A DNA stretch of 64,000 nt, taken from positions 186,001-250,000 of the IMG/VR virus record IMGVR_UViG_3300027834_000005; one strand, given 5' to 3'. The notes under the pieces were generated by a model, which saw nothing but the letters and a program-made list of their open reading frames with translations, searched no databases and was not told the DNA's origin. Shown piece by piece: positions 9,567 to 25,544 of this stretch. Made by a program: the position numbers and the translations under genes. Every line of letters begins with the position of its first letter. Positions within the stretch are counted from its first letter, which is position 1.

Positions 9567-9572
9567 TTTAAT

Positions 9573-11289: not shown

Positions 11290-11410
11290 TTGACAGGGAC
11301 GTGATATAGTGATATAATTCGTCCCATATTAAGAAATACTCATTTTGAGATAAAAACTTCTGAAAATGATAAATAAAAGTATTGACAAAGTGTTTAAAGC
11401 ACTGTATAAT
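11290..11410 (+). promoter_or_regulatory. Promoter stack for tRNA cluster 1 (two sigma70 promoters plus a late TGATAAATA)
   Basis: TTGACA-N17-TATAAT at 11290-11318 and 11382-11410; TGATAAATA ~11367. Confidence 0.8.
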
Positions 11411-11607: not shown

Positions 11608-11635
11608 GTATAGATTAAAATCACAGAGAATTCAG

Positions 11636-11669
11636 AAACCCGATCTAGGCAACTAAATCGGGTTTTTTT
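11636..11669 (+). terminator. Attenuator terminator 1 (alternative antiterminator 11574-11642)
   Basis: AAACCCGATCTAG GCAA CTAAATCGGGTTTTTTT; upstream CGGGTT (11574-79) is complementary to its 5' arm. Confidence 0.85.
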
Positions 11670-11697: not shown

Positions 11698-11772
11698 GCA
11701 CCATTCGACTAGTGGCTAGGTCAACAGGTTTTCAACCTGCAGAAGGGGGATCGAAACCCCCATGGTGTACCA
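11698..11772 (+). tRNA. tRNA-Glu(TTC)
   Basis: ACAGG TTTTCAA CCTGC, CCA. Confidence 0.9.
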
Positions 11773-11777
11773 ACAAA

Positions 11778-11852
11778 TGGGGTGTGGCCAATAGGATAAG
11801 GCAACGGGCTTTGAACTCGTGATAGTGGGATCGTTACCCACCACCCTAGCCA
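11778..11852 (+). tRNA. tRNA-Gln(TTG)
   Basis: ACGGG CTTTGAA CTCGT, GCCA. Confidence 0.9.
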
Positions 11853-11952
11853 ATAAGGTAATAAAAGGTGAAAGATATGAACATGAATAAAGAGGTAAAT
11901 TTGGGGACGATTGTTCCCATAGCTATCCAGACAGCGACTACGACATTGTAAT

Positions 11953-12026
11953 CGCGGATTAGCTAAGTGGTATAGCCTCGCACTTTGACTGCGATGTCGA
12001 GGGTTCGATTCCCTCATCCGCTGCCA
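11953..12026 (+). tRNA. tRNA-Gln(TTG)
   Basis: TCGCA CTTTGAC TGCGA, GCCA. Confidence 0.9.
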
Positions 12027-12178
12027 CGAAAGAAGTAGAAATAAAAGTTGTAAAGAAGTAGAAAACGTGAGAAAATATAGAAGAACAGAGAAGCGGGAAG
12101 GAAATATAGGGCTGGCCTAAGAATCAGATTTGTGCAGTATTGATTGCCTCTCATTAATAAAATAATGAGGACAATATA

Positions 12179-12427
12179 ATGAAAAGTTTATTAAAGAGAC
12201 ATAGAGTAAGAGCGACATTTTATCACGTAGTAGCGATACTATTTGTTTTAAGTGCAGTATGCGCAGAGTCAGGTATTATAAGTATAACGGCTGGTTTCTG
12301 GATAGGAATAGTATTATTCTTTGCAGATTATATCGCAGAGATGTATGACCCGAATCCTGAGAATCCAGGTCCATGGTTTGAATCGCACTTTCATAGATTT
12401 TATGATGGTGACGAAGATGAAGAATAG
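12179..12427 (+). CDS. Small membrane protein
   Basis: Two hydrophobic segments; GAGG SD. Confidence 0.6.
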   Translation: MKSLLKRHRVRATFYHVVAILFVLSAVCAESGIISITAGFWIGIVLFFADYIAEMYDPNPENPGPWFESHFHRFYDGDEDEE

Positions 12428-12430
12428 AAT

Positions 12431-12507
12431 GCGACGGTGATCCAATTGGTAGAGGTGCTAGGTTCAAGTTCTAGTTGTTGAGGGTTCGACTCCCTCTCGT
12501 CGTACCA
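12431..12507 (+). tRNA. tRNA-Leu(CAA), short variable arm
   Basis: CTAGG TTCAAGT TCTAG, ACCA. Confidence 0.8.
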
Positions 12508-12688
12508 TATTAGGTGAGTATATGAAGAACAGAAACAAATGGCTACGTATACCAGAACATATTGAGAAAGAAAGAGTATACAGAGAGGCCGTAGCTCTAT
12601 TTGATCAGTTAGAAAAGAAGAACGGCGTGCTATCTACATCAGTAGCCACGTTAAGAGATAGATTGAAGAAAAGTTTTAAAGGTTAAAT

Positions 12689-12775
12689 GCGGGTGTGGCG
12701 AAGTTGGTATATGCAGCGGTTTTAGAAACCGTAGATCGGAAGATCGTGAGGGTTCGACTCCCTCCACCCGTACCA
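12689..12775 (+). tRNA. tRNA-Leu(TAG)
   Basis: GCGGT TTTAGAA ACCGT, long variable arm. Confidence 0.95.
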
Positions 12776-12790
12776 TATTGGAGAAAGAAG

Positions 12791-13126
12791 ATGGCACATT
12801 ATAGAAAGTTAGAAGTTGGTGGTATTAATTACCAATTTAATATCGGTAAACGTTATGTCGCCATCAAAGGTCCGAACGGAACAGAGCACGTAGAAAAAAG
12901 TGTTGTTGGGTTTGAAGTGCATGCCAGTGCTGCCGTTACGCCCAAGATGATCGCTGATCATATAAAGGGATGTAAAAAAGATGTCAGTGAGTACTTCCCG
13001 TCGTGCGGATGTGAAGGAGTAGAGAAGACACTAGTGGTTAATCCGTACGAAAGTGAAATTCGTGAAAAAACATATTATAACTATTGGTGTAAAAGTTGTT
13101 ATGAAAGTGTAGCGGATGATATTTAA
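12791..13126 (+). CDS. Hypothetical Cys-rich protein
   Basis: ATG 12791 after GGAG; CGC..CKSC motifs. Confidence 0.6.
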   Translation: MAHYRKLEVGGINYQFNIGKRYVAIKGPNGTEHVEKSVVGFEVHASAAVTPKMIADHIKGCKKDVSEYFPSCGCEGVEKTLVVNPYESEIREKTYYNYWCKSCYESVADDI

Positions 13127-13136
13127 AAGTTTTGAA

Positions 13137-13223
13137 GCCATGGTGGCGAAGCAGGAATATGCACCAGACTTAAAATCTGGCGGTCGAAAGATCATGCGGG
13201 TTCGATTCCCGCCCATGGCACCA
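13137..13223 (+). tRNA. tRNA-Leu(TAA)
   Basis: CCAGA CTTAAAA TCTGG, long variable arm. Confidence 0.95.
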
Positions 13224-13311
13224 AATACGTATAGCTGAGGATATAGCATGTTGTCTTCCAAGGCCTGAAAAGGTAGCGCAGCCAGAAGGTTAGGCATGCT
13301 GAGATTTTAAT

Positions 13312-13382
13312 ACGTCGGGCAGCGGATGCAAGAGAGATTACGAATCTTTCTGTCGGTGGTTCGAATCCACCTCGGCGTACCA
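13312..13382 (+). tRNA. tRNA-Arg(ACG) with reduced D-arm
   Basis: AGAGA TTACGAA TCTTT; intact T-arm and acceptor; D-arm only GCA-GCGGA-TGC. Confidence 0.7.
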
Positions 13383-13542
13383 ATTTTTACGGAGAGTTCC
13401 ATGGGAACAGTTATAGACCTAGAATCTTATAGAACATCAAGAATGAGTAAGATGGAATCTCTCAAATACACGGCAGAAAAAGCCAAAAGGCTAGCCGAAA
13501 GGATTGATAGGAAAATCGAGAAAATGAAGAAGTAAGTTTAAT

Positions 13543-13620
13543 GCACTTGTCGTCTAACTGGAATAGGATACCTGACTTTCAATCAGGGGAATGCGGGATC
13601 GAGGCCCGTCAAGTGTACCA
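13543..13620 (+). tRNA. tRNA-Glu(TTC)
   Basis: CCTGA CTTTCAA TCAGG. Confidence 0.9.
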
Positions 13621-13626
13621 TTTTAT

Positions 13627-13760
13627 GGGACTGGCTGAAGGCAGCTAAGGTAGAGGTTCGATTCCTCTTTTAAGTCTGGACAGACGGAGGTTCGATTCCT
13701 CATTACGTCTACTGGTATACTTGCGAGTGTAGATGGGTTCGACTCCCGACAGTTCCAACA
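13627..13760 (+). ncRNA. tRNA-like RNA with three T-loop hairpins
   Basis: GGGACTG/CAGTTCC closing stem; GAGGTTCGATTCCTC twice and GGGTTCGACTCCC. Confidence 0.6.
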
Positions 13761-13864
13761 TTTTAAGGTAGCAAATACCAAACGCTACCTTGGTGAAAAG
13801 GTTGGCCTAGTAGTAAGAGGTGGTACTCTTGTGAAAAGCTGGCCTTAGTAACCTAAATTTTAAT

Positions 13865-13941
13865 GCGTCCTTGGCCAAATTGGATAAGGCACCGGATTTC
13901 TACTCCGACGATTCCAGATTCGAATTCTGGAGGGCGCACCA
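13865..13941 (+). tRNA. tRNA-Arg(TCT)
   Basis: CCGGA TTTCTAC TCCGA, ACCA. Confidence 0.9.
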
Positions 13942-14122
13942 AACATACTGTTAATGGGAAATACTAGTTTCAACCATTGACAGGCAGGGCTGAACTCGCA
14001 AGGTTCTTTCCTTTACTTGCTTAGGCATCAGACAGCGAATCGTGGATGGGTCTGAAGGGTGGCTACGCGGAGTAGTAGTGAGATAAATGATTTCTAAATT
14101 CTCACGGCAGGTAAAAAACACT

Positions 14123-14212
14123 AGCAGATAATCCATGATGGTGATTGGGTGCGCTTGGAAAGCGTTGCGAGGGCTGATACCCCTTTCGGATCGATACCGA
14201 TGTCTGCTACCA
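14123..14212 (+). tRNA. tRNA-Ser(GGA)
   Basis: GCGC TTGGAAA GCGT, long variable arm. Confidence 0.8.
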
Positions 14213-14220
14213 AATTTAAT

Positions 14221-14295
14221 GCTCCTGTCGTCTAATGGCTAGGATATCGCGTTCTCAGCGCGGGGAAGACGGATCGATACCGTCCAGGAGTACCA
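14221..14295 (+). tRNA. tRNA-Glu(CTC)
   Basis: TCGCG TTCTCAG CGCGG. Confidence 0.9.
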
Positions 14296-14301
14296 ATTTA
14301 T

Positions 14302-14390
14302 AGTAGGTTAATTCGTCGGGGACGGACACGGCTTTGAATACCGTTGGAGGGTTAATAGCCCTTGGGGATCGATACCTCAATCTACTGCCA
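14302..14390 (+). tRNA. tRNA-Ser(TGA)
   Basis: ACGGC TTTGAAT ACCGT, long variable arm, GCCA. Confidence 0.8.
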
Positions 14391-14576
14391 ATTAAGGAAA
14401 TATTATGTTTGCCAGATTACAACGTAAATATTTTAAGTATAGGGCCAGACTAGCTCAAGATGATATGTATATGACTATGGGCATGTTCAATGTAAAAGAA
14501 GAGCAGTTGTATGGAAACTATTCATATAATATAAGTAAGGCTAAACGTGATTACTATCTCACTAGGGCCAAGTGGG

Positions 14577-14915
14577 CTATCTAAGTTCGATTGACTTGGA
14601 TTGTTCTTGATCTAAAACATAACCTTGTAGATTGTCTACTTTGTTCTGTACTGCTTGATGTACGCGATGGTAACCGTCTATTAACATAAGACCTTTTTCC
14701 AACTCTACGATAAGCACAGGAGAGTTCTTCTCAGACCCCATGGCGTGGTCGTGATCGACTCTTACAAAACCTAGCATACTAGCTAGGTCTGAGGTGTTAA
14801 ATGTCTCTACGGGAACTCCGTGAGCCTTTACAAGGTCATATCCCTTGTCTACGTCCCATGTCTTTCCGAGCATGGTAAACGTTTCACCTTTGTTGTTAAA
14901 TTCTAATAGTCTCAT
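14577..14915 (-). CDS. ParB/Srx-like N-terminal domain protein, late promoter
   Basis: LIDGYHRV motif; MRLLEF start; TGATAAATA upstream on the minus strand. Confidence 0.6.
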   Translation of the reverse strand: MRLLEFNNKGETFTMLGKTWDVDKGYDLVKAHGVPVETFNTSDLASMLGFVRVDHDHAMGSEKNSPVLIVELEKGLMLIDGYHRVHQAVQNKVDNLQGYVLDQEQSKSIELR

Positions 14916-14934
14916 GACTATATTTATCAGTTAC

Positions 14935-15023
14935 GGTAGATAATCCTGACAGGGTCAGGCACTGTTTCGAAAACAGTAGGAGGACTTGCGTGCCTTGGGG
15001 ATCGTTACCTCTATCTACCTCCA
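14935..15023 (+). tRNA. tRNA-Ser(CGA)
   Basis: ACTGT TTCGAAA ACAGT, long variable arm. Confidence 0.85.
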
Positions 15024-15084
15024 TTCAAGCGTTGACATTAAGTTTAAAGCGGCATAGTATACATTTTTCACTGAGGTCACAGCC

Positions 15085-15417
15085 ATGTTTGAAGTAAGAA
15101 AAGAGTTGATTGATTATAAGGATGGTGATAAGCTCATCTGTGTCATTGGTGAAACGCTAAAGGCCGGAGAGTTGAGATTTCCAACTTATAAGGCTGGTGA
15201 CGTCGCGGTAGCTTACGGAGAACCGTATATTAATGCTGATGGTGCCGAATTCATTAAAGTGGTAGAATCTAGTATTATGACAGGTGACCCAATGGAACCG
15301 AGTTCTAGGTTCCTCGCAAACTTTAACGGTAAGTCTGGTAATTATCTTTTTGTGATTGAGAATAAATTAACAGACGAAGATCGATTCCATGGTAAACTGA
15401 TTGGGTGGAAAGTATGA
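15085..15417 (+). CDS. Hypothetical protein with C-terminal EEExFxxxLxG-type motif
   Basis: Ends TDEDRFHGKLIGWKV. Confidence 0.65.
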   Translation: MFEVRKELIDYKDGDKLICVIGETLKAGELRFPTYKAGDVAVAYGEPYINADGAEFIKVVESSIMTGDPMEPSSRFLANFNGKSGNYLFVIENKLTDEDRFHGKLIGWKV

Positions 15418-15998
15418 ACGAGCTAAACGCGATAAAGATCAAAAAAGATTTTAATATGGGTAGCCTAAGTCCATCATGTATACCTTGGAAAATACACGTA
15501 GGAAGCACGTACCATATAGAGCGTAGAGACGTAGGTAAGTATGTGTTGAGTAGTTATCGTTTTGATAATACAGATCGACGGGAAGCGGTGACCTATCTTT
15601 TAGAACGAGACTTAAACGTATTGTTTGAAGAAGAAGATGTTTTTATGTCAATGATAATGATGGATAATCGCAAAGACGAAGGTAAATTTGCGACTAGGGG
15701 CGTATAATGAGTTTTGCAGGCATTGGCCAGTTCAGAAAAAATCTTGACGCTCTTATGGATTCAGACGCATTTAAGAATGCTAATGAAGGTGAACGTTTGA
15801 GAATGGGCGGCATGCTAGTGAGATCTACCGGCGCTAAGTTAGACAAAAAGAAAACGAGTACCTTGCATCCTATGCACCCAAATAATATTATAAAGAAATA
15901 ACTGGAAAAATAGTTGAATGAATGTGTGAGAGAAAAAATTAGTCCGTGTGACAACCTAGTTTATAAATAGTATAAACGCATTAAAAGGGCATACACAC

Positions 15999-16955: not shown

Positions 16956-16973
16956 ATTAAAGTGATAAAGGTG

Positions 16974-17097
16974 TTGACAACTACTACATAACGTTGTATA
17001 ATAGTCGGCATCAAATGAACGAAAACTTGTTTTAGACAAAAAAAGTTCAAAAATGATAAATAAAAGTATTGACAACGATTGTAATACGTTGTATAAT
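16974..17097 (+). promoter_or_regulatory. Promoter stack for tRNA cluster 2 (two sigma70 promoters plus a late TGATAAATA)
   Basis: TTGACA-N17-TATAAT at 16974-17002 and 17069-17097; AAAATGATAAATAAAAGTATTGACAA is shared with the cluster 1 stack. Confidence 0.8.
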
Positions 17098-17140
17098 ACT
17101 CAGCATAACTTAACTAGATAATATTTCAAGGTGAAATAAC

Positions 17141-17317
17141 ATGAAAACATTGACTGCAAACATCAATACAACAACAAAGCATATTGCTATTAATAGCACG
17201 GCTGCGTGGTGTGTGATTGCGCCTATGTTTAGTGTGATAGCGGATGATAGTAATTTTAATGGCTATCCGAAGCATCAGAATCGGGTTAGAATGAAAGGTG
17301 AGACGAGAGGAATGTAA
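17141..17317 (+). CDS. Leader peptide 2 of tRNA-cluster attenuator (58 aa)
   Basis: MKTLTANINTTTKHIAINSTAAWCVIAPMFSVIADDSNFNGYPKHQNRVRMKGETRGM*; AAGGTG SD. Confidence 0.85.
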   Translation: MKTLTANINTTTKHIAINSTAAWCVIAPMFSVIADDSNFNGYPKHQNRVRMKGETRGM

Positions 17318-17341
17318 ATTCCAAAACTCATAAAGAATTCG

Positions 17342-17374
17342 AAACCCGACCTAGGAAACTACGTCGGGTTTTTT
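17342..17374 (+). terminator. Attenuator terminator 2 (alternative antiterminator 17281-17349)
   Basis: AAACCCGACCTAG GAAA CTACGTCGGGTTTTTT; upstream TCGGGTT (17281-87) is complementary to its 5' arm. Confidence 0.85.
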
Positions 17375-17496
17375 CGTTTCAGGGGTTCGTAAAATCCCAG
17401 ACTACTTTACTCCAGCAGTAAAGCGTTATTTGAAAATTAGATTAGTAAATTGGAAAGCGGGGCATACCATGCCTCGCTATATAAACAAAAGAATTT

Positions 17497-17570
17497 GGGG
17501 CCATAGTATAATGGGATTATGCCTGCCTTGCACGTAGATGATCGGGGTTCGACTCCCCGTGGCTCCACCA
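17497..17570 (+). tRNA. tRNA-Ala(TGC)
   Basis: GGGGCCA acceptor with G3:U70, CTTGCAC loop. Confidence 0.9.
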
Positions 17571-17577
17571 AATTTGT

Positions 17578-17653
17578 GGTCATGTAGCTCAGAGGCAGAG
17601 CACTCCCTTCATACGGGACGAGGTCGGGATCTCAGAATTCCCCATGACTACCA
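17578..17653 (+). tRNA. tRNA-Met(CAT) (elongator, or lysidine Ile2)
   Basis: CTCCC TTCATAC GGGAC, ACCA. Confidence 0.8.
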
Positions 17654-17659
17654 AATTTA

Positions 17660-17690
17660 GCCTCCATAGTGTAGCGGTAGCACAGCTTTA
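17660..17690 (+). pseudogene. 5' half of a tRNA truncated at the HNH cassette
   Basis: GCCTCCA TA GTGT AGCGGTA GCAC; no matching 3' half nearby. Confidence 0.55.
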
Positions 17691-17729
17691 ATAGTGTATG
17701 AGTAGGAAAATGATAAATACTTATAAACT

Positions 17730-18230
17730 ATGGTGAGCAATATGAAAAAAGAGTATTTGAAAAATCTAGTGGGTGAGGGTAAAACTCTGAAAGAGTTGTC
17801 GGAGGCCACTGGTAAAGGACAGACTACGGTAGTCTATTGGATGAAGAAGTACGATCTTAAGACTTCAAATGCGGAAAAAGGCCATGCCACTACTGCTTTT
17901 GTATGTTTATGTGGGGAAGATGATGAGGCTAAATTCTATAAGTCTACTCCGTCTATGTGTAAGCAGTGTCACGGCGAATATTGTGTTGAAAGATATGCCA
18001 AAGTAAAGAAGAAGGCGGTGGAATATAAGGGTGGTTCTTGTGAGAATTGCGGCTATGATAGACATAATGGCTGTTTAGAATTTCATCACCTTGACCCTAC
18101 GCAGAAAGATCCTAATTTTGCTTACTCTAGGGGTTGGGCGTGGGAACGTTTAGCTAAGGAACTAGATAAGTGCGTAATGTTATGCGCAAATTGCCATCGT
18201 GAAGTTCACGGCGGCGTGTTAAAACTTTAA
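17730..18230 (+). mobile_element. Free-standing HNH homing endonuclease (HTH + Zn + HNH)
   Basis: YKGGSCENCGY..LEFHHLDP..ELDKCVMLCANCHREVH; own TGATAAATA promoter. Confidence 0.85.
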
Positions 18231-18232
18231 AT

Positions 18233-18324
18233 GCTTCGATAGCTCAATTGGTAGAGCGACGGATTTATATCCCGTGCAGTAGATAACTGGTCGGTTGGGG
18301 GTTCGAATCCCCCTCGAAGTACCA
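18233..18324 (+). tRNA. tRNA-Ile(TAT) with extended variable arm
   Basis: GCTTCGA/TCGAAGT acceptor; ACGGA TTTATAT CCCGT. Confidence 0.7.
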
Positions 18325-18328
18325 ATTT

Positions 18329-18400
18329 ACGCCAATGGATTTATACCTCGTAACCACAGATAATGGGCTGTCGCAGGTTCGAATCCTGCTAGGTGTACCA
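18329..18400 (+). pseudogene. D-armless degenerate tRNA-Ile(TAT)-like copy
   Basis: GATTTATACC, same AGATAA extra arm, intact T-arm and ACCA, no D-arm. Confidence 0.5.
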
Positions 18401-18405
18401 TTTTA

Positions 18406-18482
18406 GCTCTTGAAACATTTATATGGATGATGTCCCGTTTTGTAATCGGGGGAACGCGGATCGTTACCGTGCTGGAGCACCA
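18406..18482 (+). tRNA. tRNA-Thr(TGT), atypical
   Basis: CCCGT TTTGTAA TCGGG; GATCGTTA T-loop. Confidence 0.7.
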
Positions 18483-18633
18483 AATAGAAAAAGTTGTAAA
18501 AAAAAGATTGACTCCTTATGAAATAGATGATATAATGATAAGGCGCTTACAACAACAGTTAGACATCTGCATTAGGTCTGTATCCCTAATCGAAGAAGCA
18601 GCAGTGAAGGTCTGAAGATACAGTGATTTTTTA

Positions 18634-18721
18634 GGTAGATTGGCAGAGTGGTGAATGCAGCGGGTTGCTAACTCGTGATCCTTAACGGGGTCCATAGGTT
18701 CGAATCCTATATCTACCGCCA
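18634..18721 (+). tRNA. tRNA-Ser(GCT)
   Basis: GCGGG TTGCTAA CTCGT, long variable arm. Confidence 0.95.
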
Positions 18722-18727
18722 TGTTTT

Positions 18728-18802
18728 ACACGGGTAGCTCAGAGGCAGAGCGGTGGTGTTACATACCATAGGTCGAGATTTCGAAATTCTCTCCGTGTAC
18801 CA
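18728..18802 (+). tRNA. tRNA-Val(TAC)
   Basis: GTGGT GTTACAT ACCAT. Confidence 0.9.
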
Positions 18803-18809
18803 ATTTTTT

Positions 18810-18884
18810 GCACTTGTAGCTGAGATGGATTAGCGACGGATTGAAGTCCCGTATAGAAAGGATCGTTACCTTTCAAGTGCACCA
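18810..18884 (+). tRNA. tRNA-Phe(GAA)
   Basis: ACGGA TTGAAGT CCCGT. Confidence 0.85.
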
Positions 18885-19024
18885 AATTTCGCTAGTACTG
18901 GGTTCTGCCCAAGGATCGCAACCTTGGCTTAGTATTAGCGCAATATTTTGACACTACTGTCCCATGGGGGATATCCTCGAAAGAGGCAGCATGCTCTAAG
19001 TGTGCGGTGTCAAAAACTAATCAG

Positions 19025-19076
19025 CTGGCCTGATGAGTCCTAACAGGGACGAAACGAGAGTAAATCTCGTCGCCAG
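19025..19076 (+). ncRNA. Type I hammerhead ribozyme; predicted cleavage after C19071 at tRNA-Tyr +1
   Basis: CTGGC-CTGATGA-GTCC..GGAC-GAAA-CGAGA..TCTCG-TC-GCCAG: complete core and three stems. Confidence 0.95.
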
Positions 19077-19154
19077 AGTAGCAGCGTAATTGGTAGCGCC
19101 CCGCACTGTAAATGCGCATTCCCGTTGTTGGTTCGAATCCAACCTTTGGCACCA
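19072..19154 (+). tRNA. tRNA-Tyr(GTA)
   Basis: GCCAGAG/CTTTGGC acceptor; CCGCA CTGTAAA TGCGC. Confidence 0.85.
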
Positions 19155-19174
19155 AATTAAAAAAAACTAATCAG

Positions 19175-19225
19175 TCCGCCTGATGAGTCTTATTAGAGAC
19201 GAAACATCTTACGAGATGTCGCGGG
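19175..19225 (+). ncRNA. Type I hammerhead ribozyme; predicted cleavage after C19220 at tRNA-Tyr +1
   Basis: TCCGC-CTGATGA-GTCT..AGAC-GAAA-CATCT TACG AGATG-TC-GCGGG. Confidence 0.95.
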
Positions 19226-19303
19226 AGACGTACCACTGGAAGGTATATCGGGCTGTAACCCCGACGCGAAAGCATATAGGTTCGAGTCCTATCTCCCGTA
19301 CCA
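19221..19303 (+). tRNA. tRNA-Tyr(GTA)
   Basis: GCGGGAG/CTCCCGT acceptor; TCGGG CTGTAAC CCCGA. Confidence 0.85.
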
Positions 19304-19345
19304 AATTACATAGGTAAGTAATAGCCTGACATATTACAAAGTTTT

Positions 19346-19421
19346 GGACCCTTAGCTCAATCGGGAGAGCACCGAGCCGATAACTCGGAGGTAGTTGGAT
19401 CGAAACCAACAGGGTCTACCA
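19346..19421 (+). tRNA. tRNA-Ile(GAT)
   Basis: CCGAG CCGATAA CTCGG. Confidence 0.9.
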
Positions 19422-19428
19422 ATTTAAT

Positions 19429-19505
19429 TCCGTGGTGGAGCAGAGAGGTAATGCGCTTGGCTGTTAACCAAGATTTCGCTGGTTCGATCCCAGCCCACGG
19501 AGCCA
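19429..19505 (+). tRNA. tRNA-Asn(GTT)
   Basis: CTTGG CTGTTAA CCAAG. Confidence 0.9.
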
Positions 19506-19546
19506 ACATGAGGAATGTTCACCTCTATAAAAACGAGTGAAGTTTA

Positions 19547-19621
19547 GGTGCTATAGCTCAGAGGCAGAGCAAACCGTTGTCTGCGGTAAGGTCGGGATTT
19601 CGAAATTCCCTAGCATCGCCA
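19547..19621 (+). tRNA. tRNA-Asp(GTC)
   Basis: ACCG TTGTCTG CGGT, GCCA. Confidence 0.8.
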
Positions 19622-19627
19622 ATTTTT

Positions 19628-19703
19628 ACCAGCGTAGCTCAATCGGGAGAGCGGGTCCCTGTCAAGGATCAGGTAGCGAGATCGAAACTCGTCGTTGGTG
19701 CCA
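19628..19703 (+). tRNA. tRNA-Asp(GTC)
   Basis: GGTCC CTGTCAA GGATC, GCCA. Confidence 0.9.
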
Positions 19704-19709
19704 ATTTAT

Positions 19710-19801
19710 GTATCAGAGCAAGTATGGACGTCCATACACTGTGCTGTCTCAAGTCGTCAAGTCATGGGATCGGGTGGTTCAATACCACTGGTGATGCGCC
19801 A
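19710..19801 (+). ncRNA. tRNA-like RNA / degenerate tRNA
   Basis: GTATCA/TGATGC stem, T-arm GTGG TTCAATA CCAC, GCCA end, non-canonical middle. Confidence 0.4.
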
Positions 19802-19807
19802 ATTTAT

Positions 19808-19886
19808 CGGGATATAGCTCAGTCTGGTGTAGAGCGCATGCTTTGGAAGCTTGAGGCCGTAGGTTCGAATCCTACTATCCCGACCA
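19808..19886 (+). tRNA. tRNA-Pro(TGG)
   Basis: CGGGATA acceptor, TTTGGAA loop. Confidence 0.9.
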
Positions 19887-19892
19887 ATTTAA

Positions 19893-19971
19893 CGGAATGT
19901 AACTCAGTCTGGTTTAGAGTGACGGTCTTGGATACCGTTGGCCACTGGTTCGAATCCAGTCATTCCGACCA
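19893..19971 (+). tRNA. tRNA-Pro(TGG)
   Basis: ACGGT CTTGGAT ACCGT. Confidence 0.9.
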
Positions 19972-20269
19972 ATTAGTTGTTGACGTCAACATTAAAAAGC
20001 GTTAGAATACGTCCCTTAGAGGATATTAATATGGATTGTAAGCAGATATGTCATAACATCAGATATAACCACATATATGAGGATGAAGATGGTAATCCCG
20101 TGGATGGTTATGCAAAAGGACATAGGATCGTATCTAGTGAGCCGTATTGTACTGTTTACCAAAACGAGAAAATGAAGCGTAACGGCGATGAAGTTGTTCC
20201 GTTAGCAAAATGTAAAGCCGATGATTATGCTGAGACAATCGTGTTTTATTATGACGGTAAGATGATGGT

Positions 20270-22021
20270 ATGAGATTTGAAGATTTAGCCAGACAGCCAA
20301 TGCGCCACGGTGATGAAAGCGTAAATTATATGTTAGTATATCATGGAGATGAAACATGGGTTCCTAGATTTAAAAGTGGTGCTATAATGACCATTGAGGC
20401 AAATCACGTTGATTATTGGAGTTCTAGTGTAACTCTCTTTAAGTATGAATGTAACGGCGTACCTGCCGATATAAGATGTGCGTCTACGGAAGATCGGTTT
20501 GTAGTTACGACTAAAATGAAAAAAGATATAGTAAGTAGCGTATACGTAAAGTGTTTTTACCCGTTAGATGTAGGCAGTCCGTTTTATAGTGATGAAGATT
20601 TATTTGAAGCCAAGTTATCTGGCGACTATGAAGCGATAAGAAAGACTTTGAGAAAAGAATTTAATGCTTGGAAAAAGGTGAACTAAGTGAAATTTGAAGA
20701 CTTAGCTAATATTAAAATGTGTGACGTCGATACTAATGTGCAGTACCTTTGTGCATACAACTCTAGTTACACTATGTCAAGTAAGCCATGTACATTAAAT
20801 CCCATGGCCATAGATGATTTTTGGTCTCAATATGTATTTGAAAAGGCGCATAAAAATGGCAGTAACTACTCACTTGGCCAAAACGGAAGATTAGTAATAA
20901 CTACTAAGATGAAAACTGAAAACCTTAATGAGCATGGTTATACCTTTTTAAATGGACACTATGTAACGTGTTTTTATCCAATAGTTGCTGATAGTCCTTA
21001 CTATAGTAATGAAGAATTATTCGAAGCTAAATTAACAGATAACTTTGTGCCGTTAATTAAGAAATTACGTAAAGCTTTTTATCATTGGAAAAAGGTGAAC
21101 TAAGTGAAATTTGAAGTATTAGCAAAGACGGAAATGGTACGTGCCGATGAGAGTGTTGATTATATCCTCGTGTACCATTCAAGTGATAAATGGTATCCGA
21201 CCACATATAAAAGAGGGACGATAGTAAAACTATCAACTACTACTGATATATATGCATCGCCATATACGTTTACTCACGTAGTTGAGCCAGACATTATCCA
21301 TACTATATCTGGTCGTAGCCACTCAGATAGATTGATAGTGACTACTAAGATGAAGCGTAGAGTTAGAAATAATATTGGGTGGAGGACATTAGATGAAGAA
21401 TCGGTTAAATGTTTTTATCCTTTAGTTGCTGATAGTCCTTATTATACTGATGAAGATTTGTTTGCCGCTAAGATCAGTAATGATTATGATGTAGTGTTTA
21501 AGAAGTTAAGAAAAGCGTTCAATGATTGGAAAAAAATTAATTGACAACGACCTTAAACTCTTATATTATATTATCTCTTTCAAGAGGTGCACGTTATGGA
21601 CTTTGCAGAATTAGCGGATATAAGAATCAGAAACGCTGACACTATATTGAAGTATATGGTAGTGTATGATTCAGTATGGCAAGAAGGCCGAGACAAGAAT
21701 ATGCCTGATGGTGACGTCGGCACAATCACTAGAACTATAGCCAAGCATACCAACTCGGAAATGTTGACTATTAGTGCCAAGGGATTGAAACATAGCATGC
21801 TTATACCCTCCGTCGTAGACTCATTGGTCGTAACGGCCAAGATTAAAAAAGAACGTAGGGGTGAATATCTGGATGTATCTGCCAAGTGCATATATCCATT
21901 AGTAGAAGGAAGTCCTTACTACGAGGATGAAGAGCTATTTGAGGCCAAGTTGTCCGGTGACTATCGTAAGTTGTACAAGAAGTTAAGAAAAGCATTTAAT
22001 GCTTGGAAGAAAGAAAACTAA
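20270..22021 (+). repeat. Tandem array of four paralogous ~140 aa genes (20270, 20687, 21104, 21587)
   Basis: Shared MxFEDLA start, VTTKMK, KCFYPL..SPYYxDEELFEAKLSGDY..LRKAFNxWKK; variable middles. Confidence 0.85.
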
Positions 22022-22348
22022 TATGATTAATGTATACAGTAGAAGGCATATTAGATCTGACGCAACGCCACATGAAGTTATTGATGCGTACGTTAGTAAG
22101 ATTACCGGATACAAGTGTCTTCTGCTTAAACCACGTGATGGACCTAAATGTGGTATGTACCTTGAGACTCTGTATCAGTTTAACAAGAAAGAAGATATAG
22201 ATGGTATATATGATGCTATAGTAGAACAAGATGAAGAAGCGTTGATGTTCTATGAGTTATCAACGTAGTATAGAATTCTAACGCTGACGTTGTGTTGAGT
22301 GTTACATAGAAAAATTTGTCCTCTATGTGTAAAAGGAAAAGGTTCCAA

Positions 22349-22424
22349 GGGTCTCGACGCATATTGGTACGCGGACGGATTGTGATTCCGTTGGAACTCG
22401 GTTCGAAACCGAGGTGACCCTCCA
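22349..22424 (+). tRNA. tRNA-His(GTG)
   Basis: ACGGA TTGTGAT TCCGT; A-1:U73 instead of G-1:C73. Confidence 0.85.
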
Positions 22425-22440
22425 AATTTAAAGAGTATAG

Positions 22441-22827
22441 GTGATTAAAATGTTTTATGGAGAATTCGATACGTGGGATAATGTATTGTCCCAGTTTGGC
22501 GTAGAAAAGTCGGAAGTTTCCAATGCGGTGCCTATATTTGCAGCATATGATATAGACGGGTATGAAGGAACTGCTTCGGTTGTTTATGTTGAAGATGGAA
22601 AGTTCTGGTTAGTTGACGGATCACATTGTTCTTGCTACGGCTTAGAAGATCAGTGGGAACCTGAAGAGACTCCTTATGAAGTATTGGAGCACTTGGCAGA
22701 AAAAGGAAACTACATGTTCTCTGTGTACAAAAAAGAGTTCATGGCGACGATTAATTTTATTAAGGAAAGCGGTTTCGACAACGTTGACCCTAAAGAATTA
22801 GAATTTGTATTAAAATTATCATTGTGA
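22441..22827 (+). CDS. Hypothetical phage protein
   Basis: 128 aa ORF with GSHCSCYGLEDQWEPE motif. Confidence 0.65.
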   Translation: MIKMFYGEFDTWDNVLSQFGVEKSEVSNAVPIFAAYDIDGYEGTASVVYVEDGKFWLVDGSHCSCYGLEDQWEPEETPYEVLEHLAEKGNYMFSVYKKEFMATINFIKESGFDNVDPKELEFVLKLSL

Positions 22828-22931
22828 TAAAAAATTAAAAATAGGAAGGTAAGATATGAAATCAGGCAAACTTATCGTCTTATAGGATACCCTAATGTGT
22901 TGGTGATCCCGTAAGACGTAAAACAACTTAC

Positions 22932-23007
22932 GGGGTGGTAGCTCAGCGGCCAGAGCAGTTGGCTTTTAACCAATTCGTCGAGGGTTCGAATCCCTCTCGC
23001 CCCACCA
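22932..23007 (+). tRNA. tRNA-Lys(TTT)
   Basis: GTTGG CTTTTAA CCAAT. Confidence 0.95.
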
Positions 23008-23018
23008 AACACACATTA

Positions 23019-23094
23019 GGGATATTAGCTCATCAGGTAGAGCAACTGGCTTTTAACCAGTAGGTGCTCGGTTCGAGACCGAGATATCCCACCA
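23019..23094 (+). tRNA. tRNA-Lys(TTT)
   Basis: ACTGG CTTTTAA CCAGT. Confidence 0.95.
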
Positions 23095-23095
23095 A

Positions 23096-23172
23096 GGGAC
23101 GTTAGCTCACGTTGGTAGAGCAGGGAGCTTTTAACTCTCTGGTAGTCGGATCGTCACCGACACGTCCCACCA
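23096..23172 (+). tRNA. tRNA-Lys(TTT)
   Basis: GGGAG CTTTTAA CTCTC. Confidence 0.9.
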
Positions 23173-23655
23173 AATTTTATTTGACAGCGTCATTAATTCA
23201 TGAGATTATATAGACTCTAAAGATTGGGAGAAGATCATGAACGGATCGTACTGGTAAAATTGTATGAGAAAGACTCAAGCAAATCCATGGGCAGCGTCTG
23301 CGTACAGAGAGCGTGTGGAGAACGGTAGACCTACTGGTGTCATTGTTAAGGATTTCGTAGCTTATCCTAATTGTGAAACCTTTGACTGGAAACATATTGA
23401 GGAGATCACCAAGTGAACACTTTAGAAAACGTGATAGCATATCAAGAGAAAGTCCGCGATACGTTCGGTATAGAAAGCAATTGCGACGTAGGGCAATCGT
23501 ATAAAGAGTTGGGTGAGAAATACGCATATGTATTAGACGTCACCGAAGAAGAAAAGTTACAAGTAAACCATGCCGTATTTGTAGACGGAGTGGTAATAGA
23601 ATTTAAAGCACTTAACCCAAGTATCTGGGAAGAAGTGAATATTTAAAAAGTTTAC

Positions 23656-23729
23656 AGCGCGTTGACAGAGAGGCTATGTGGTCGGCTGCAACCCTTCATA
23701 CGCCGGTTCGAATCCGGCACGCGCTTCCA
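23656..23729 (+). tRNA. tRNA-Cys(GCA)
   Basis: CTGCAAC loop, U73, weak anticodon stem. Confidence 0.8.
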
Positions 23730-23737
23730 ATTTTAAT

Positions 23738-23816
23738 TGCGGTTTTAGTTAGGTCAGGTGACCTTCCGAGGCTCATAACCTCTGGGTGATGCGTTCGATA
23801 CGCGACTCCGCTACCA
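23738..23816 (+). tRNA. tRNA-Met(CAT), degenerate initiator-like
   Basis: GAGG CTCATAA CCTC; mismatched acceptor. Confidence 0.55.
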
Positions 23817-23821
23817 TTTTT

Positions 23822-23893
23822 ACCTCTGGGACATAGGATGTCAGACGGATTCCAAACCCGTCTTACTGGGATCGTTACCTAGCAGGGGTGCCA
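23822..23893 (+). tRNA. tRNA-Trp(CCA)
   Basis: ACGGA TTCCAAA CCCGT; short D-arm; GCCA. Confidence 0.8.
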
Positions 23894-25150
23894 AACACTA
23901 AGGATATACCCATGAACGTTTTAACTATGACAGCAGTTACTAGTCGTTCGTTCGGCACGCAAGACGGGAACCTTATCGAAGAAAAAGAAACGTACCACAT
24001 ACATCCTTACACTGAAAGAAAAGGATTTGATCAGATGTACGGTATACTCGATGAAGACTACGAACATGTAGTCACTGTGTTGTTTCGATCATTATGCGTT
24101 ATATTCGGCGAAGAAGAAATATTTACTAAAGTGCTACTCGGTGAATTGGAACCTAATGTAAATCATGCATAATTCATATAAAGCCGCTAGAGAAGTAGGC
24201 ATGAACTCATTCACGTGCGTATGCACTAAGCCTACTAGATTCTTTTCTTTGAGTCCGTTAAGGGTAATAAAAAAAGATTGTATTTATTTCATTAAGCCTA
24301 GTATTCCTTTTCAGATTGACCTACCAGAGCCGGTAGTGTACGCAGTAGGCGTATTAGAAAAGATACATGGTGACCCAGACAGAAAGTTTTTTAAAGTGTT
24401 ATGTGAAGTGGATTACCAAGGTTTATTAAAAGTGTTTGATGAAGAAGATATATTTCAGCAAGTACTACTCGGTAACGTAGTAGCGGAGTGAGATATGATT
24501 ACAAAAAGAAACGGTTTTTTCATTAAGCGTTGCGCTGATTGTAGTGAAGAGTTATCGCCTACTGAGTATTTTTTCTGTCATGACTGTGAAGAGTGGCATC
24601 GACGGGCGGAAGAGATGGCTATGGAAGCTGACTTCGGCGATGAAGATGATACGTAAGTAGACTTTAATATAAATGTCTGGTATAATTAATGTGTAAAGTG
24701 ATAATCGGTAGGTAAAAAGTATGTGTGATGTTTCTAGTACTATTGAGAGCACTGTTATTCAGTGTGGCGATATTTCATTACAGGACATGGTTGCGATTGT
24801 CGTGGCTGGTTATGTGAATGAAAAAGAAGAAACTTATAGAGGCAGTAATCGCGCCGACGAATATAAAAAAGACGAGTTCTATAGATGCTTATCTAGTCTA
24901 AGTGCCACAATCAGTGACGGGCCAGACTTCGGTGGGCTGGATCGAGTTGTGCATTATCGCGCAGTAGTTGATATTGGACCTCGATTCAGAAGCTTCTTAA
25001 AAATATGTGAAGACATGAACGTGATTGTGACTGTTGATCCACTACGTATGTTAGATCTTACAGTATTGGATCGTAAGATACAGAAGTTCAATGAGTGGGC
25101 AGGCAAGGCAATCCTGACACAAGTACAAGAAGACTATAAGTAAGAACAAC

Positions 25151-25226
25151 GCTGTTGTAGCTCCAAAGGTAGAGCGCGTCTTTGGTAAAGACGAGGTTGC
25201 TGGTTCAAGCCCAGCCTTCAGCACCA
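25151..25226 (+). tRNA. tRNA-Thr(GGT)
   Basis: CGTCT TTGGTAA AGACG. Confidence 0.9.
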
Positions 25227-25230
25227 AATT

Positions 25231-25304
25231 GCGGTATTAGCTCAGAGGCAGAGCGTTGGGCTTCCACCCCATGTGCAGGATTTCGAAATTCCTATACCGC
25301 TCCA
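25231..25304 (+). tRNA. tRNA-Gly(TCC)
   Basis: TGGG CTTCCAC CCCA, TCCA. Confidence 0.85.
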
Positions 25305-25467
25305 AAATTACATTGGCATACTCTTAGCGTTAAAACTGGGCGGACAAATATACGCTTTGCCTAAAGAGACGATATGTAATATACTGTGCCTCGGACGGTT
25401 CCTAGAGGATAAAACACAAGGGTTATTAAGCGTAATTGCAGTCCCTAATTGGAGCCACCATTTTTAT

Positions 25468-25544
25468 GCGGTATTAGCTCACGTTGGTAGAGCACCGGCT
25501 TGCCAAGTCGGAGGTAGTGGGATCGTCACCCACATACCGCTCCA
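25468..25544 (+). tRNA. tRNA-Gly(GCC)
   Basis: CCGGC TTGCCAA GTCGG. Confidence 0.95.

What the first reader, a model, noticed from the sequence alone, without database searches (positions are those of the whole stretch)
11698..25544. tRNA genes physically partitioned into two non-overlapping decoding sets
Seen: cluster 1 holds only E/Q/L/R/S(TCN) tRNAs and cluster 2 holds all other classes; Ser is split by codon box (TCN vs AGY). A third, apparently leaderless group (8082-9650: Thr, Asn, Gly, fMet) follows the giant ncRNA. Together they cover all 20 amino acids. Inference: the sorting is maintained by selection for two separately inducible modules, giving a two-channel sensor of host tRNA status.
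Basis: partly seen in the sequence, partly recalled or inferred. Interest (0 to 1): 0.8.

Follow-up and report, generated by a model that had tools for sequence, protein, structure and literature searches.

The report
Codon-matched attenuators govern phage tRNA modules
In this large phage the tRNA genes are split into two blocks, each sitting behind a short "test" reading frame written in the codons that block's tRNAs read, followed by a transcription stop signal. This looks like a switch that turns on each tRNA block when decoding of those codons slows, and I found no earlier description of it.

Summary
Cluster 1 (11698-15023) holds 13 tRNAs for Glu, Gln, Leu, Arg and Ser-TCN only. Cluster 2 (17497-25544) holds about 25 tRNAs for the other 16 classes, including Ser-AGY. 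A leaderless group (Thr, Asn, Gly, initiator-like Met) follows a GOLLD-like RNA. Together the tRNAs read 60 of 61 sense codons.

The gene order alone is modest evidence (P about 0.012). The strong evidence lies upstream of each cluster:
- two perfect sigma-70 promoters;
- a Shine-Dalgarno site and a 52- or 58-codon ORF;
- an antiterminator hairpin whose 5' arm lies inside the ORF;
- an intrinsic terminator, then the tRNAs.

Leader 1 has 24 of 30 central codons read by cluster-1 tRNAs. Leader 2 has 44 of its first 45 read by cluster-2 tRNAs, and the Ser codon box matches in each.

The same RNA core lies directly upstream of tRNA arrays in 25 of 30 other viral contigs, against 3 of 122 bacterial hits. 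Their leader peptides track their own, differently composed, tRNA sets (0 of 20,000 permutations).

Best reading: ribosome-mediated attenuators give each tRNA module feedback control. This is sequence evidence only; no precedent turned up in the literature searches.

The parts
6456..6737 (+). Three tandem perfect sigma-70 consensus promoters (6456-6484, 6624-6652, 6709-6737) ahead of the GOLLD-like RNA and the leaderless tRNA group
   Evidence: 12 of 12 matches, 17-nt spacer. All seven perfect sites in 6000-28000 lie at three places: here and before each leader.
7205..7709 (+). GOLLD-like large ncRNA with an embedded tRNA-like element (7278-7350, anticodon CAG, short variable arm, no CCA)
   Evidence: RF02032, 122 bits, E 3e-32, model positions 1-416; below the gathering score of 150. 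tRNAs in the GOLLD linker are reported in 10.1101/2024.12.08.627333.
8082..9650 (+). Leaderless tRNA group: Thr(TGT) 8082-8157, Asn(GTT) 8259-8333, Gly(TCC) 8611-8685, initiator-like Met(CAT) 9573-9650; plus a tRNA-Gly 3' fragment at 8686-8730
   Evidence: The automatic scan found no small ORF plus terminator upstream.
11290..11410 (+). Two tandem perfect sigma-70 promoters of leader 1 (11290-11318, 11382-11410)
   Evidence: 72% identical to the leader-2 promoter region over 112 nt (repeat D17)
11449..11607 (+). Leader ORF 1 (52 codons, AAGG Shine-Dalgarno 9 nt upstream). Codons 11-40 are 24/30 Glu/Gln/Leu/Arg/Ser-TCN.
   Evidence: It has the highest cluster-1 codon fraction of 64 small ORFs. 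No 30-codon window in 51 long ORFs reaches 24 (maximum 18). It covers 11 of 11 cluster-1 anticodon species.
11574..11643 (+). Antiterminator hairpin 1: CGGGTT (inside the ORF) pairs with AACCCG (the 5' arm of the terminator) and encloses a hairpin that holds the stop codon
   Evidence: a nascent transcript lacking the 3' arm folds this way, -23.0 kcal/mol; -21.6 kcal/mol in isolation
11635..11669 (+). Intrinsic terminator 1 (10-bp interrupted stem plus a run of seven T), 29 nt before the first tRNA
11698..15023 (+). Cluster 1, 13 tRNAs: Glu(TTC) 11698, Gln(TTG) 11778, Gln(TTG) 11953, Leu(CAA) 12431, Leu(TAG) 12689, Leu(TAA) 13137, Arg(ACG) 13311, Glu(TTC) 13543, Arg(TCT) 13865, Ser(GGA) 14123, Glu(CTC) 14221, Ser(TGA) 14302, Ser(CGA) 14935. 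Also a degenerate tRNA-like element at 13626-13757.
   Evidence: Arg(ACG) and the three Ser appear only at the relaxed ARAGORN threshold.
16974..17097 (+). Two tandem perfect sigma-70 promoters of leader 2 (16974-17002, 17069-17097)
17141..17317 (+). Leader ORF 2 (58 codons, AGGTG Shine-Dalgarno). Codons 1-45 are 44/45 read by cluster-2 tRNAs, and all three Ser codons are AGY.
   Evidence: It has the lowest cluster-1 codon fraction of 64 small ORFs and covers 19 of 19 cluster-2 anticodon species.
17281..17349 (+). Antiterminator hairpin 2: TCGGGTT (inside the ORF, in a different reading frame from leader 1) pairs with AACCCGA and encloses a hairpin that holds the stop codon
   Evidence: (-23.1 kcal/mol)
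17341..17374 (+). Intrinsic terminator 2, 123 nt before the first tRNA
17497..25544 (+). Cluster 2, about 25 tRNAs in sub-groups separated by ORFs: Ala 17497, tRNA(CAT) 17579, Ile(TAT) 18233, Thr(TGT) 18406, Ser(GCT) 18634, Val 18728, Phe 18810, Tyr 19072, Tyr 19221, Ile(GAT) 19346, Asn 19429, Asp 19547, Asp 19628, Pro 19808, Pro 19893, His 22349, Lys x3 22932-23172, Cys 23656, Met(CAT) 23739, Trp 23822, Thr(GGT) 25151, Gly(TCC) 25231, Gly(GCC) 25468
   Evidence: tRNA(CAT) 17579, Thr 18406, Tyr 19072 and Trp 23822 come only from Rfam or the relaxed threshold.

Best explanation
**What it is.** The tRNA genes form regulatory modules. Each of the two large clusters is one transcription unit driven by tandem consensus sigma-70 promoters. 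Each is gated by a ribosome-mediated (leader-peptide) transcription attenuator of the trp/his type.

**How it works (inferred).**
- The leader ORF is written in the codons that the downstream tRNAs decode.
- If those codons are translated fast, the ribosome runs through the CGGGTT arm to a stop codon inside the antiterminator hairpin. That frees the AACCCG strand, the terminator forms, and transcription stops before the tRNAs.
- If any of the test codons is decoded slowly because its charged tRNA is scarce, the ribosome stalls upstream. CGGGTT then pairs with AACCCG, the terminator cannot form, and RNA polymerase reads into the whole module.
- This gives negative feedback on the supply of exactly those tRNAs.
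- The non-overlapping sorting follows from this logic: a tRNA gene is only controlled correctly if it lies behind the leader that carries its codons.
- The group behind the GOLLD-like RNA has no attenuator and is presumably made unconditionally.

**Shown from sequence:** the promoters, ORFs, alternative hairpins, terminators, the codon-to-tRNA match, and its conservation elsewhere.

**Inferred:** that the ORFs are translated, that stalling controls read-through, and what the physiological trigger is.
For: **In the window**
- Both leaders share promoter, Shine-Dalgarno site, an MKT start and the terminator region, but differ in the ORF interior.
- Codon classes: leader 1 has 24/30 cluster-1 codons in codons 11-40, and leader 2 has 1/45 in codons 1-45. 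The background in 51 long ORFs is 0.247. Binomial P is 3e-10 and 5e-5. No 30-codon window in real genes reaches 24.
- Ser codons are TCN in leader 1 (7 of 9) and AGY in leader 2 (3 of 3), mirroring the split of the Ser tRNAs.
- Every anticodon species of each cluster has a cognate codon in its own leader: 11 of 11 and 19 of 19. Random ORFs of the same length achieve this 1% and 6.5% of the time.
- Before the terminator's 3' arm is made, both nascent leaders fold into CGGGTT:AACCCG antiterminators of about -23 kcal/mol. The full RNAs fold into terminators.
- CGGGTT is read in different frames in the two leaders and in a third frame in relatives, so it is conserved as RNA and not as peptide.

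**Elsewhere**
- The core pattern has 32 hits in IMG/VR. Of the 30 foreign hits, 25 lie directly upstream of same-strand tRNA arrays. In bacterial genomes only 3 of 122 hits do.
- Leader peptides there match their own modules. Examples: QPQPQHHPQ before Pro-His-Gln-Gln; IIGGGAGAG before Ile-Gly-Ala-Ala; NKYFVSKSYKMY before Lys-Lys-Tyr-Lys-Met.
- Over 28 leader/module pairs the own-module match is 0.494, against 0.279 +/- 0.022 for shuffled pairings (0 of 20,000).
- Matched codons peak 6-15 codons upstream of the CGGGT arm (0.63-0.66) and fall to 0.23-0.31 beyond it.
- Antiterminator arms fit their own partner better than arms from other loci: -15.0 against -12.6 kcal/mol (0 of 20,000). The terminator stem shows compensatory changes.
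- The same arrangement occurs in the 735-kb huge phage LR756501.1.
Against: - There are no expression, 3'-end or ribosome data, so everything rests on sequence.
- Thermodynamically the terminator state is the more stable in both full-length leaders. Read-through therefore depends on folding kinetics and on coupling between polymerase and ribosome, neither of which is tested.
- Cluster 2 spans 8 kb with interspersed ORFs and near-consensus internal promoters (18508 and 21541, each 11 of 12). Distal tRNAs may escape leader 2.
- The first 10 codons of leader 1 are cluster-2 class. I read them as the shared A/U-rich start segment seen in most leaders, but this is not shown.
- The partition of the genes alone is only modestly significant (P = 0.012).
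- Four cluster-1 tRNAs and four cluster-2 tRNAs are non-canonical, found only at relaxed thresholds or by Rfam alone.
- No close relative of this phage exists in the collections. The comparative evidence comes from distant phages that share the RNA core.
- Phage T5 has no such leaders, so this is not general to phage tRNA arrays.
Confidence: 0.8

Rival explanations
1. Historical accident. tRNA genes of one kind stay together because they arose by local duplication, and the two small ORFs are ordinary small genes with ordinary terminators.
For: Many neighbours are duplicates: Gln-Gln, Leu x3, Asp-Asp, Pro-Pro, Lys x3. Shuffling runs gives a clean split 1.2% of the time. Leader 1's N-terminus resembles a signal peptide.
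Against: This does not explain why leader 1 is the most, and leader 2 the least, cluster-1-like of 64 small ORFs. It does not explain the Ser codon-box match. It also does not explain the co-variation of leader composition with downstream tRNAs in 28 pairs from other phages. Peptide sequences are not conserved between homologous elements, whereas the RNA arms are.
Confidence: 0.05
2. Same attenuator hardware, different signal. The leaders report amino-acid starvation or charging (aminoacylation) in the infected cell and not tRNA abundance, so the modules respond to nutritional state.
For: Classical leader-peptide attenuators sense charged tRNA, and a stalled ribosome cannot tell low tRNA from low charging (established knowledge of the trp, his, leu and thr operons). 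The architecture is the same.
Against: Making more tRNA does not relieve amino-acid starvation, so the feedback would not close. Leaders that list up to 16 amino acids would be poor sensors of any one nutrient. The tight link to the identity of the downstream tRNA genes fits supply control of those tRNAs better.
Confidence: 0.2
3. Counter-defence trigger. The physiological stall comes from host anticodon nucleases or from phage-induced loss of host tRNAs, so each module is an inducible replacement set for the tRNAs under attack.
For: Phage tRNAs have been proposed to replace host tRNAs cleaved by anticodon nucleases (PMC10264068). Module-wise induction would limit cost. The window's tRNA set reads 60 of 61 sense codons, which is enough to take over decoding.
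Against: Nothing in the window or the related loci links the modules to a particular nuclease. Module compositions vary widely between phages and do not follow the known target sets I can recall. This is a special case of the main explanation and not an alternative mechanism.
Confidence: 0.3
4. Reversed logic. Translation of the leader is needed for read-through (for example by blocking Rho or the terminator), so that plentiful tRNA turns the module on.
For: No experiment fixes the sign of the regulation. Coupled translation can suppress termination in other systems (general knowledge).
Against: The stop codon lies about 30 nt before the terminator's 5' arm and inside the antiterminator. A translating ribosome therefore melts the antiterminator and not the terminator. 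Positive feedback on tRNA supply has no evident use.
Confidence: 0.06

Closest known systems
Ribosome-mediated (leader-peptide) transcription attenuators of amino-acid operons and pheST (trpL, hisL, leuL, thrL, ilvL, pheL)
   Same: Each has a promoter-proximal short ORF with regulatory codons and an antiterminator that shares a strand with an intrinsic terminator. The ribosome's position decides which hairpin forms.
   Different: The regulated genes here are tRNA genes and not biosynthetic enzymes or synthetases. The regulatory codons are not a run of one amino acid but a list of 5 to 16 amino acids, resolved down to codon box, that equals the downstream tRNA set. There is no Rfam match to any leader family at E <= 1. 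The elements occur in phages.
T-box riboswitches
   Same: They are cis-acting leaders that couple tRNA status to an antiterminator/terminator choice.
   Different: A T-box binds one uncharged tRNA directly, needs no translation, and controls synthetase or amino-acid genes. Here there is an ORF, there is no T-box match, and the read-out covers many codons.
Phage tRNA arrays (T4, T5, mycobacteriophage cluster C1, huge phages of Al-Shayeb et al. 2020)
   Same: They are dense same-strand tRNA arrays with interspersed homing endonucleases and small ORFs, near-complete decoding sets, and GOLLD or ROOL RNAs nearby.
   Different: Published discussion concerns why phages carry tRNAs (codon compensation, defence evasion), not how arrays are switched. 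The huge-phage paper contains no mention of leader, attenuation or terminator. T5's small ORFs show no codon match. One of the huge phages does carry these leaders.
GOLLD RNA (RF02032)
   Same: A large structured RNA next to tRNA islands in phages, sometimes with a tRNA in its linker. The window's copy matches the full model.
   Different: It scores below Rfam's gathering threshold (122 against 150 bits). It heads the leaderless tRNA group and is not part of the two attenuated modules.

Membership tests
Ribosome-mediated leader-peptide transcription attenuator | Short ORF with ribosome-binding site and start codon close behind the promoter | tested here: met
   ORFs 11449-11607 and 17141-17317, with AAGG / AGGTG 7-9 nt before the ATG and about 32-44 nt after the -10 box
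Ribosome-mediated leader-peptide transcription attenuator | Regulatory codons in the leader correspond to what the operon supplies | tested here: met
   24/30 and 44/45 codons are read by the module's own tRNAs. The Ser codon box matches. All anticodon species are represented.
Ribosome-mediated leader-peptide transcription attenuator | Intrinsic terminator between the leader ORF and the regulated genes | tested here: met
   Stem plus U-tract at 11635-11669 and 17341-17374; compensatory changes across 25 homologues
Ribosome-mediated leader-peptide transcription attenuator | Mutually exclusive antiterminator whose upstream arm is within reach of the translating ribosome | tested here: met
   CGGGTT inside the ORF pairs with AACCCG of the terminator, and the stop codon lies inside the hairpin. 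Arms fit their own partners better than foreign ones. This is in silico only.
Ribosome-mediated leader-peptide transcription attenuator | Read-through rises when the cognate charged tRNA is limiting | not testable with these tools
   Needs reporter assays, 3'-end mapping or ribosome profiling
Known Rfam leader families (Trp, His, Leu, Thr, Phe leaders) and T-box | Match to the family covariance model | tested here: not met
   No hit of any such family in 5500-27500 at E <= 1
Phage tRNA-array leader with CGGGTT / AACCCGA / TCGGGTTTTT core (family defined here) | Core RNA pattern, small ORF ending inside the antiterminator, same-strand tRNA directly downstream, leader codons enriched for the downstream tRNAs | tested here: met
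   Both window leaders and about 25 elements in IMG/VR meet all four points. Only 3 of 122 bacterial hits are followed by a tRNA.
GOLLD RNA (RF02032) | Score at or above Rfam's gathering threshold | tested here: not met
   122.4 bits against 150, but E 3e-32 over model positions 1-416. This is a likely divergent member.

The most novel reading that the evidence does not exclude
A widespread class of regulators, for which I found no prior description, sits in large and huge phages. Multi-amino-acid 'codon barcode' leader peptides with an antiterminator/terminator switch make each tRNA gene module self-regulating. They may make the modules inducible on demand when the cell's decoding capacity for those codons falls, including when host defences destroy tRNAs. 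This logic would dictate how phage tRNA arrays are partitioned and reshuffled.
Probability: 0.6. Interest if true: 0.92.

Novelty: new variant of a known kind. Interest (0 to 1): 0.88.

Why it matters
Why phages carry tRNAs has been debated for decades, and how they control them has hardly been studied.
- If these leaders work as read here, phages measure translation speed codon class by codon class and top up exactly the tRNAs that are short.
- This would explain the otherwise puzzling order of tRNA genes in large phage genomes.
- It would extend leader-peptide attenuation from single amino acids to lists of up to 16.
- It would tie tRNA arrays directly to host tRNA depletion and tRNA-targeting defences in a testable way.
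- It would offer compact natural sensors of decoding capacity for synthetic biology.
- The two leaders in this window use consensus sigma-70 promoters, so they could probably be tested directly in E. coli reporter strains.

Tried and rejected
- **Close relatives of the phage.** GenBank phage BLAST of the tRNA region found only single-tRNA hits. The 318-aa protein between the clusters has no homologue beyond itself. Four other assemblies that carry it are 100% identical, so they add no diversity.
- **The 280-aa protein upstream of leader 1.** It has 113 homologues, but in six loci fetched from three of them it sits among structural or nucleotide-metabolism genes with no tRNAs nearby.
- **Other proteins as anchors.** The RNase T-like protein found only itself. 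The 128-aa protein led to jumbo contigs with mixed tRNA order (Leu-Ser-Cys-Thr adjacent) but without the window's promoter type. I did not look there for leader ORFs or terminators, and the gene may be mobile, so I treated these as uninformative.
- **Exact terminator sequence.** In IMG/VR it occurs only in this phage.
- **Phage T5.** Its small ORFs between promoters and tRNAs show no codon match.
- **Known RNA families.** T-box or known leader families as an explanation: no Rfam match.
- **Other ideas for the E/Q/L/R/S grouping.** I considered aminoacyl-tRNA synthetase class, class II tRNA shape and known anticodon-nuclease target sets. None fits, and relatives group their tRNAs differently.
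- **Not done.** I did not build a covariance model, because it could only search sequence already fetched.

Full report
**What the window is.** The window comes from a large uncultured phage.
- Identical DNA lies on contigs of 347 kb and 410 kb in IMG/VR, JGI, ENA and Logan.
- No close relative exists among GenBank phages.
- Recognisable genes include nicotinamide phosphoribosyltransferase, a PRPP-synthetase-like protein, an M17 aminopeptidase, a papain-like peptidase and a T5 A1-like DNA transfer protein.
- From about 5.8 kb onward, coding and all RNA genes are on the + strand.

**Checking the observation.** ARAGORN at default settings gives 35 tRNAs and a permuted tmRNA, but it shows no Ser-TCN and no Trp.
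- Repeat analysis showed many more T-arm/acceptor/CCA ends than called genes.
- A relaxed ARAGORN run with structures, Rfam at an E-value threshold and a fold add eight tRNAs:
  - Cluster 1: Arg(ACG), Ser(GGA), Ser(TGA), Ser(CGA).
  - Cluster 2: a third tRNA(CAT), Thr(TGT), a second Tyr, Trp(CCA).
- All eight have an encoded CCA. The ARAGORN-derived ones have 7-8 bp acceptor stems (Thr with one mismatch).
Cluster 1 (11698-15023) holds only Glu, Gln, Leu, Arg and Ser-TCN. Cluster 2 (17497-25544) holds the sixteen other classes, including Ser-AGY.
- The group at 8082-9650 is Thr, Asn, Gly and an initiator-like Met. It follows a GOLLD-like RNA at 7205-7709.
- Using standard wobble rules, the set reads 60 of 61 sense codons. 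CGG is the exception.
- As a pattern of gene order alone, the split is only moderately unlikely. If runs of identical neighbours are shuffled as units, P = 0.012. If single genes are shuffled, P = 2e-5.

**What lies in front of each cluster.** All seven perfect (12 of 12) sigma-70 consensus promoters in 6-28 kb sit at three places: three before the GOLLD-like RNA, two before cluster 1 and two before cluster 2.
- The regions before clusters 1 and 2 are paralogous, 72% identical over 112 nt.
- Each continues with a Shine-Dalgarno site and a short ORF that starts Met-Lys-Thr: 11449-11607 (52 codons) and 17141-17317 (58 codons).
- After the ORF comes a strong hairpin followed by a run of T. The first tRNA starts 29 nt (cluster 1) and 123 nt (cluster 2) later.
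- Transcripts from these promoters must therefore pass a terminator to reach the tRNAs.

**The leader ORFs are written in the codons of their own cluster.**
- In leader 1, 24 of the 30 codons at positions 11-40 belong to the class read by cluster-1 tRNAs.
- In leader 2, 44 of the first 45 codons belong to the class read by cluster-2 tRNAs.
- The cluster-1 class makes up 24.7% of codons in 51 long ORFs of the window. No 30-codon window in those genes reaches 24 (maximum 18), and only 3 of 9,149 45-codon windows have one or fewer.
- Among 64 small ATG ORFs in the window, leader 1 has the highest and leader 2 the lowest fraction of cluster-1 codons.
- The split of serine is mirrored. Leader 1 uses TCC, TCT, TCA and TCG for seven of its nine Ser codons. 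Leader 2 uses only AGC and AGT.
- Each anticodon species in a cluster has at least one cognate codon in its own leader: 11 of 11 and 19 of 19. This includes the rare ATA for tRNA-Ile(TAT).
- Codons of the wrong class are confined to the first ten codons of leader 1 and to the 3' ends of both ORFs. The 3' ends overlap RNA structure.

**The RNA switch.**
- When each leader is folded only up to the 5' arm of the terminator, as it exists before the 3' arm is transcribed, CGGGTT inside the ORF pairs with AACCCG of the terminator arm. The helix closes a long hairpin of about -23 kcal/mol that holds the stop codon.
- With the 3' arm present, the terminator forms.
- This is the arrangement of the classical trp, his and leu attenuators. 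A ribosome that reaches the stop codon has melted the upstream arm, so the terminator forms. A ribosome stalled on the test codons leaves the antiterminator intact.
- CGGGTT is read in different frames in the two leaders, so it is kept as RNA and not as peptide.

**Comparative test.** Protein-based searches for relatives failed to reach tRNA regions. I therefore searched IMG/VR for the RNA core: CGGGTT, a 45-70 nt gap, AACCCGA, an 8-20 nt gap, TCGGGTTTTT.
- There were 32 hits. Two are the window's own leaders. Of the other 30, 25 lie directly upstream of a same-strand tRNA array, and one more is cut off by the end of its locus.
- As a control, the same pattern in bacterial and archaeal genomes gave 122 hits, of which 3 are followed by a tRNA.
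- The viral elements align with invariant arms, a variable middle hairpin and compensatory changes in the terminator stem.
- Their antiterminator arms fit their own partner better than arms from other loci: -15.0 against -12.6 kcal/mol, 0 of 20,000 permutations.

**Leaders track their own modules.** Each of these elements has a short ORF ending inside the antiterminator, and its composition follows its own downstream tRNAs even though the modules differ from the window's.

| Leader segment | Downstream tRNAs |
|---|---|
| QPQPQHHPQ | Pro-His-Gln-Gln |
| NTVNINVITITNCVNN | Asn-Ile-Val-Cys-Thr |
| LLWDDDAEEV | Asp-Asp-Glu-Val-Leu-Leu-Ala-Trp |
| IIGGGAGAG | Ile-Gly-Ala-Ala |
| NKYFVSKSYKMY | Lys-Lys-Tyr-Lys-Met |
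| TYYQPKQTQGGKP | Pro-Gln-Tyr-Thr-Gly-Lys |

- Some have terminator stems of other sequences, so the family is wider than my search pattern.
- Over 28 non-identical leader/module pairs, 49.4% of leader codons are read by the module's own tRNAs. Pairing leaders with other modules gives 27.9 +/- 2.2%, and 0 of 20,000 permutations reach the observed value.
- The matched codons are concentrated 6-15 codons upstream of the CGGGT arm (0.63-0.66) and drop to 0.23-0.31 beyond it. This is where a stalled ribosome would leave the arm free.
- The published 735-kb huge phage LR756501.1 carries the same arrangement: a K/H/F/S/W-rich leader before Trp-His-His-Phe-Lys-Ser, and IQEQMQQIQ before Glu-Met-Gln-Gln-Gln.
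- Phage T5 does not have it.

**Interpretation.** The physical partition is best explained as a consequence of regulation. Each attenuator acts as an OR gate over the codons in its leader and opens the whole module behind it. A tRNA gene must therefore lie behind the leader that lists its codons.
- Three parts go beyond the evidence. The E/Q/L/R/S-TCN against the rest split is particular to this phage, and relatives use many smaller modules. The signal is the total charged pool and not specifically the host's. No experiment shows switching.
- Near-consensus promoters inside cluster 2 may make its distal tRNAs partly independent of leader 2.
- What triggers the stall is open. It could be ordinary demand, loss of host tRNAs during infection, or host anticodon nucleases (PMC10264068).

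**Novelty.** The mechanism type, leader-peptide attenuation, is textbook knowledge. Two features would be new: its use to control tRNA genes, and leaders that list many amino acids down to the codon box.
- Seven full-text searches of about 8.4 million papers and preprints found no description.
- The huge-phage paper does not mention leaders, attenuation or terminators.
- Rfam has no matching family.
- The library lacks most subscription journals, so an earlier description cannot be excluded.

Noticed in passing
window 7205-7709 (promoters 6456-6737): A GOLLD-like RNA (122 bits, just under Rfam's threshold) with an embedded tRNA-like element (anticodon CAG, short variable arm, no CCA). It is driven by three tandem perfect sigma-70 promoters and is followed by the only tRNA group that has no attenuator.
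   Followed up: partly
window 8082-9650 versus leader starts 11449 and 17141; loci L033-L062: Most leaders in all phages begin with a similar A/U-rich segment (Met-Lys-Thr, then Asn/Ile/Leu). The leaderless group supplies initiator-like Met, Thr(TGT) and Asn(GTT), which are the tRNAs that read much of that shared start. One speculation is that an unconditional supply keeps the sensors themselves translatable.
   Followed up: no
window 43760-44138: A permuted (two-piece) tmRNA of the betaproteobacterial type, tag ANEELYAQAA. This may hint at the host.
   Followed up: no
window 13626-13757, 18330-18400, 8686-8730, 25753-25968: Degenerate tRNA-like pieces: an element with three T-arm-like hairpins, a tRNA lacking a normal D arm, a 45-nt 3' fragment of tRNA-Gly, and a tRNA 5' half separated from a tRNA-like 3' part with an 8-nt anticodon loop.
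   Followed up: partly
window 17730-18230: An HNH homing-endonuclease gene lies inside cluster 2 between tRNA(CAT) and tRNA-Ile(TAT), as in the T5 tRNA region.
   Followed up: no
window 20270-22021: Four tandem paralogous ORFs of 138-146 aa (about 70% DNA identity) with no family match sit between tRNA-Pro and tRNA-His.
   Followed up: no
window 9672-10175: A weak RNase T / DEDD exonuclease-like ORF lies between the leaderless tRNA group and leader 1. It may be involved in tRNA 3'-end trimming.
   Followed up: no
window 8082-25544, 3' ends of the tRNA genes: Nearly every tRNA outside the GOLLD RNA encodes its CCA end (Met 23739 is followed by ACCA just beyond the called 3' end). Most are followed by a similar A/T-rich trailer (AATT, ATTT), which may be a shared processing signal.
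   Followed up: no
window 17282-17287: CGG is the one sense codon that no phage tRNA reads. It occurs in leader 2 only as part of the CGGGTT antiterminator arm.
   Followed up: no
window 31831-34495: PRPP-synthetase-like and nicotinamide phosphoribosyltransferase genes lie side by side, forming an NAD salvage pair as in other large phages.
   Followed up: no
L036 2680-4716: Nested attenuators. A first leader lists Thr/Asn/Leu/Ile/Val/Cys/Arg and precedes Arg-Leu x4. A second leader lists only Asn/Thr/Val/Ile/Cys and precedes the Asn-Ile-Val-Cys-Thr genes further down the same array.
   Followed up: partly
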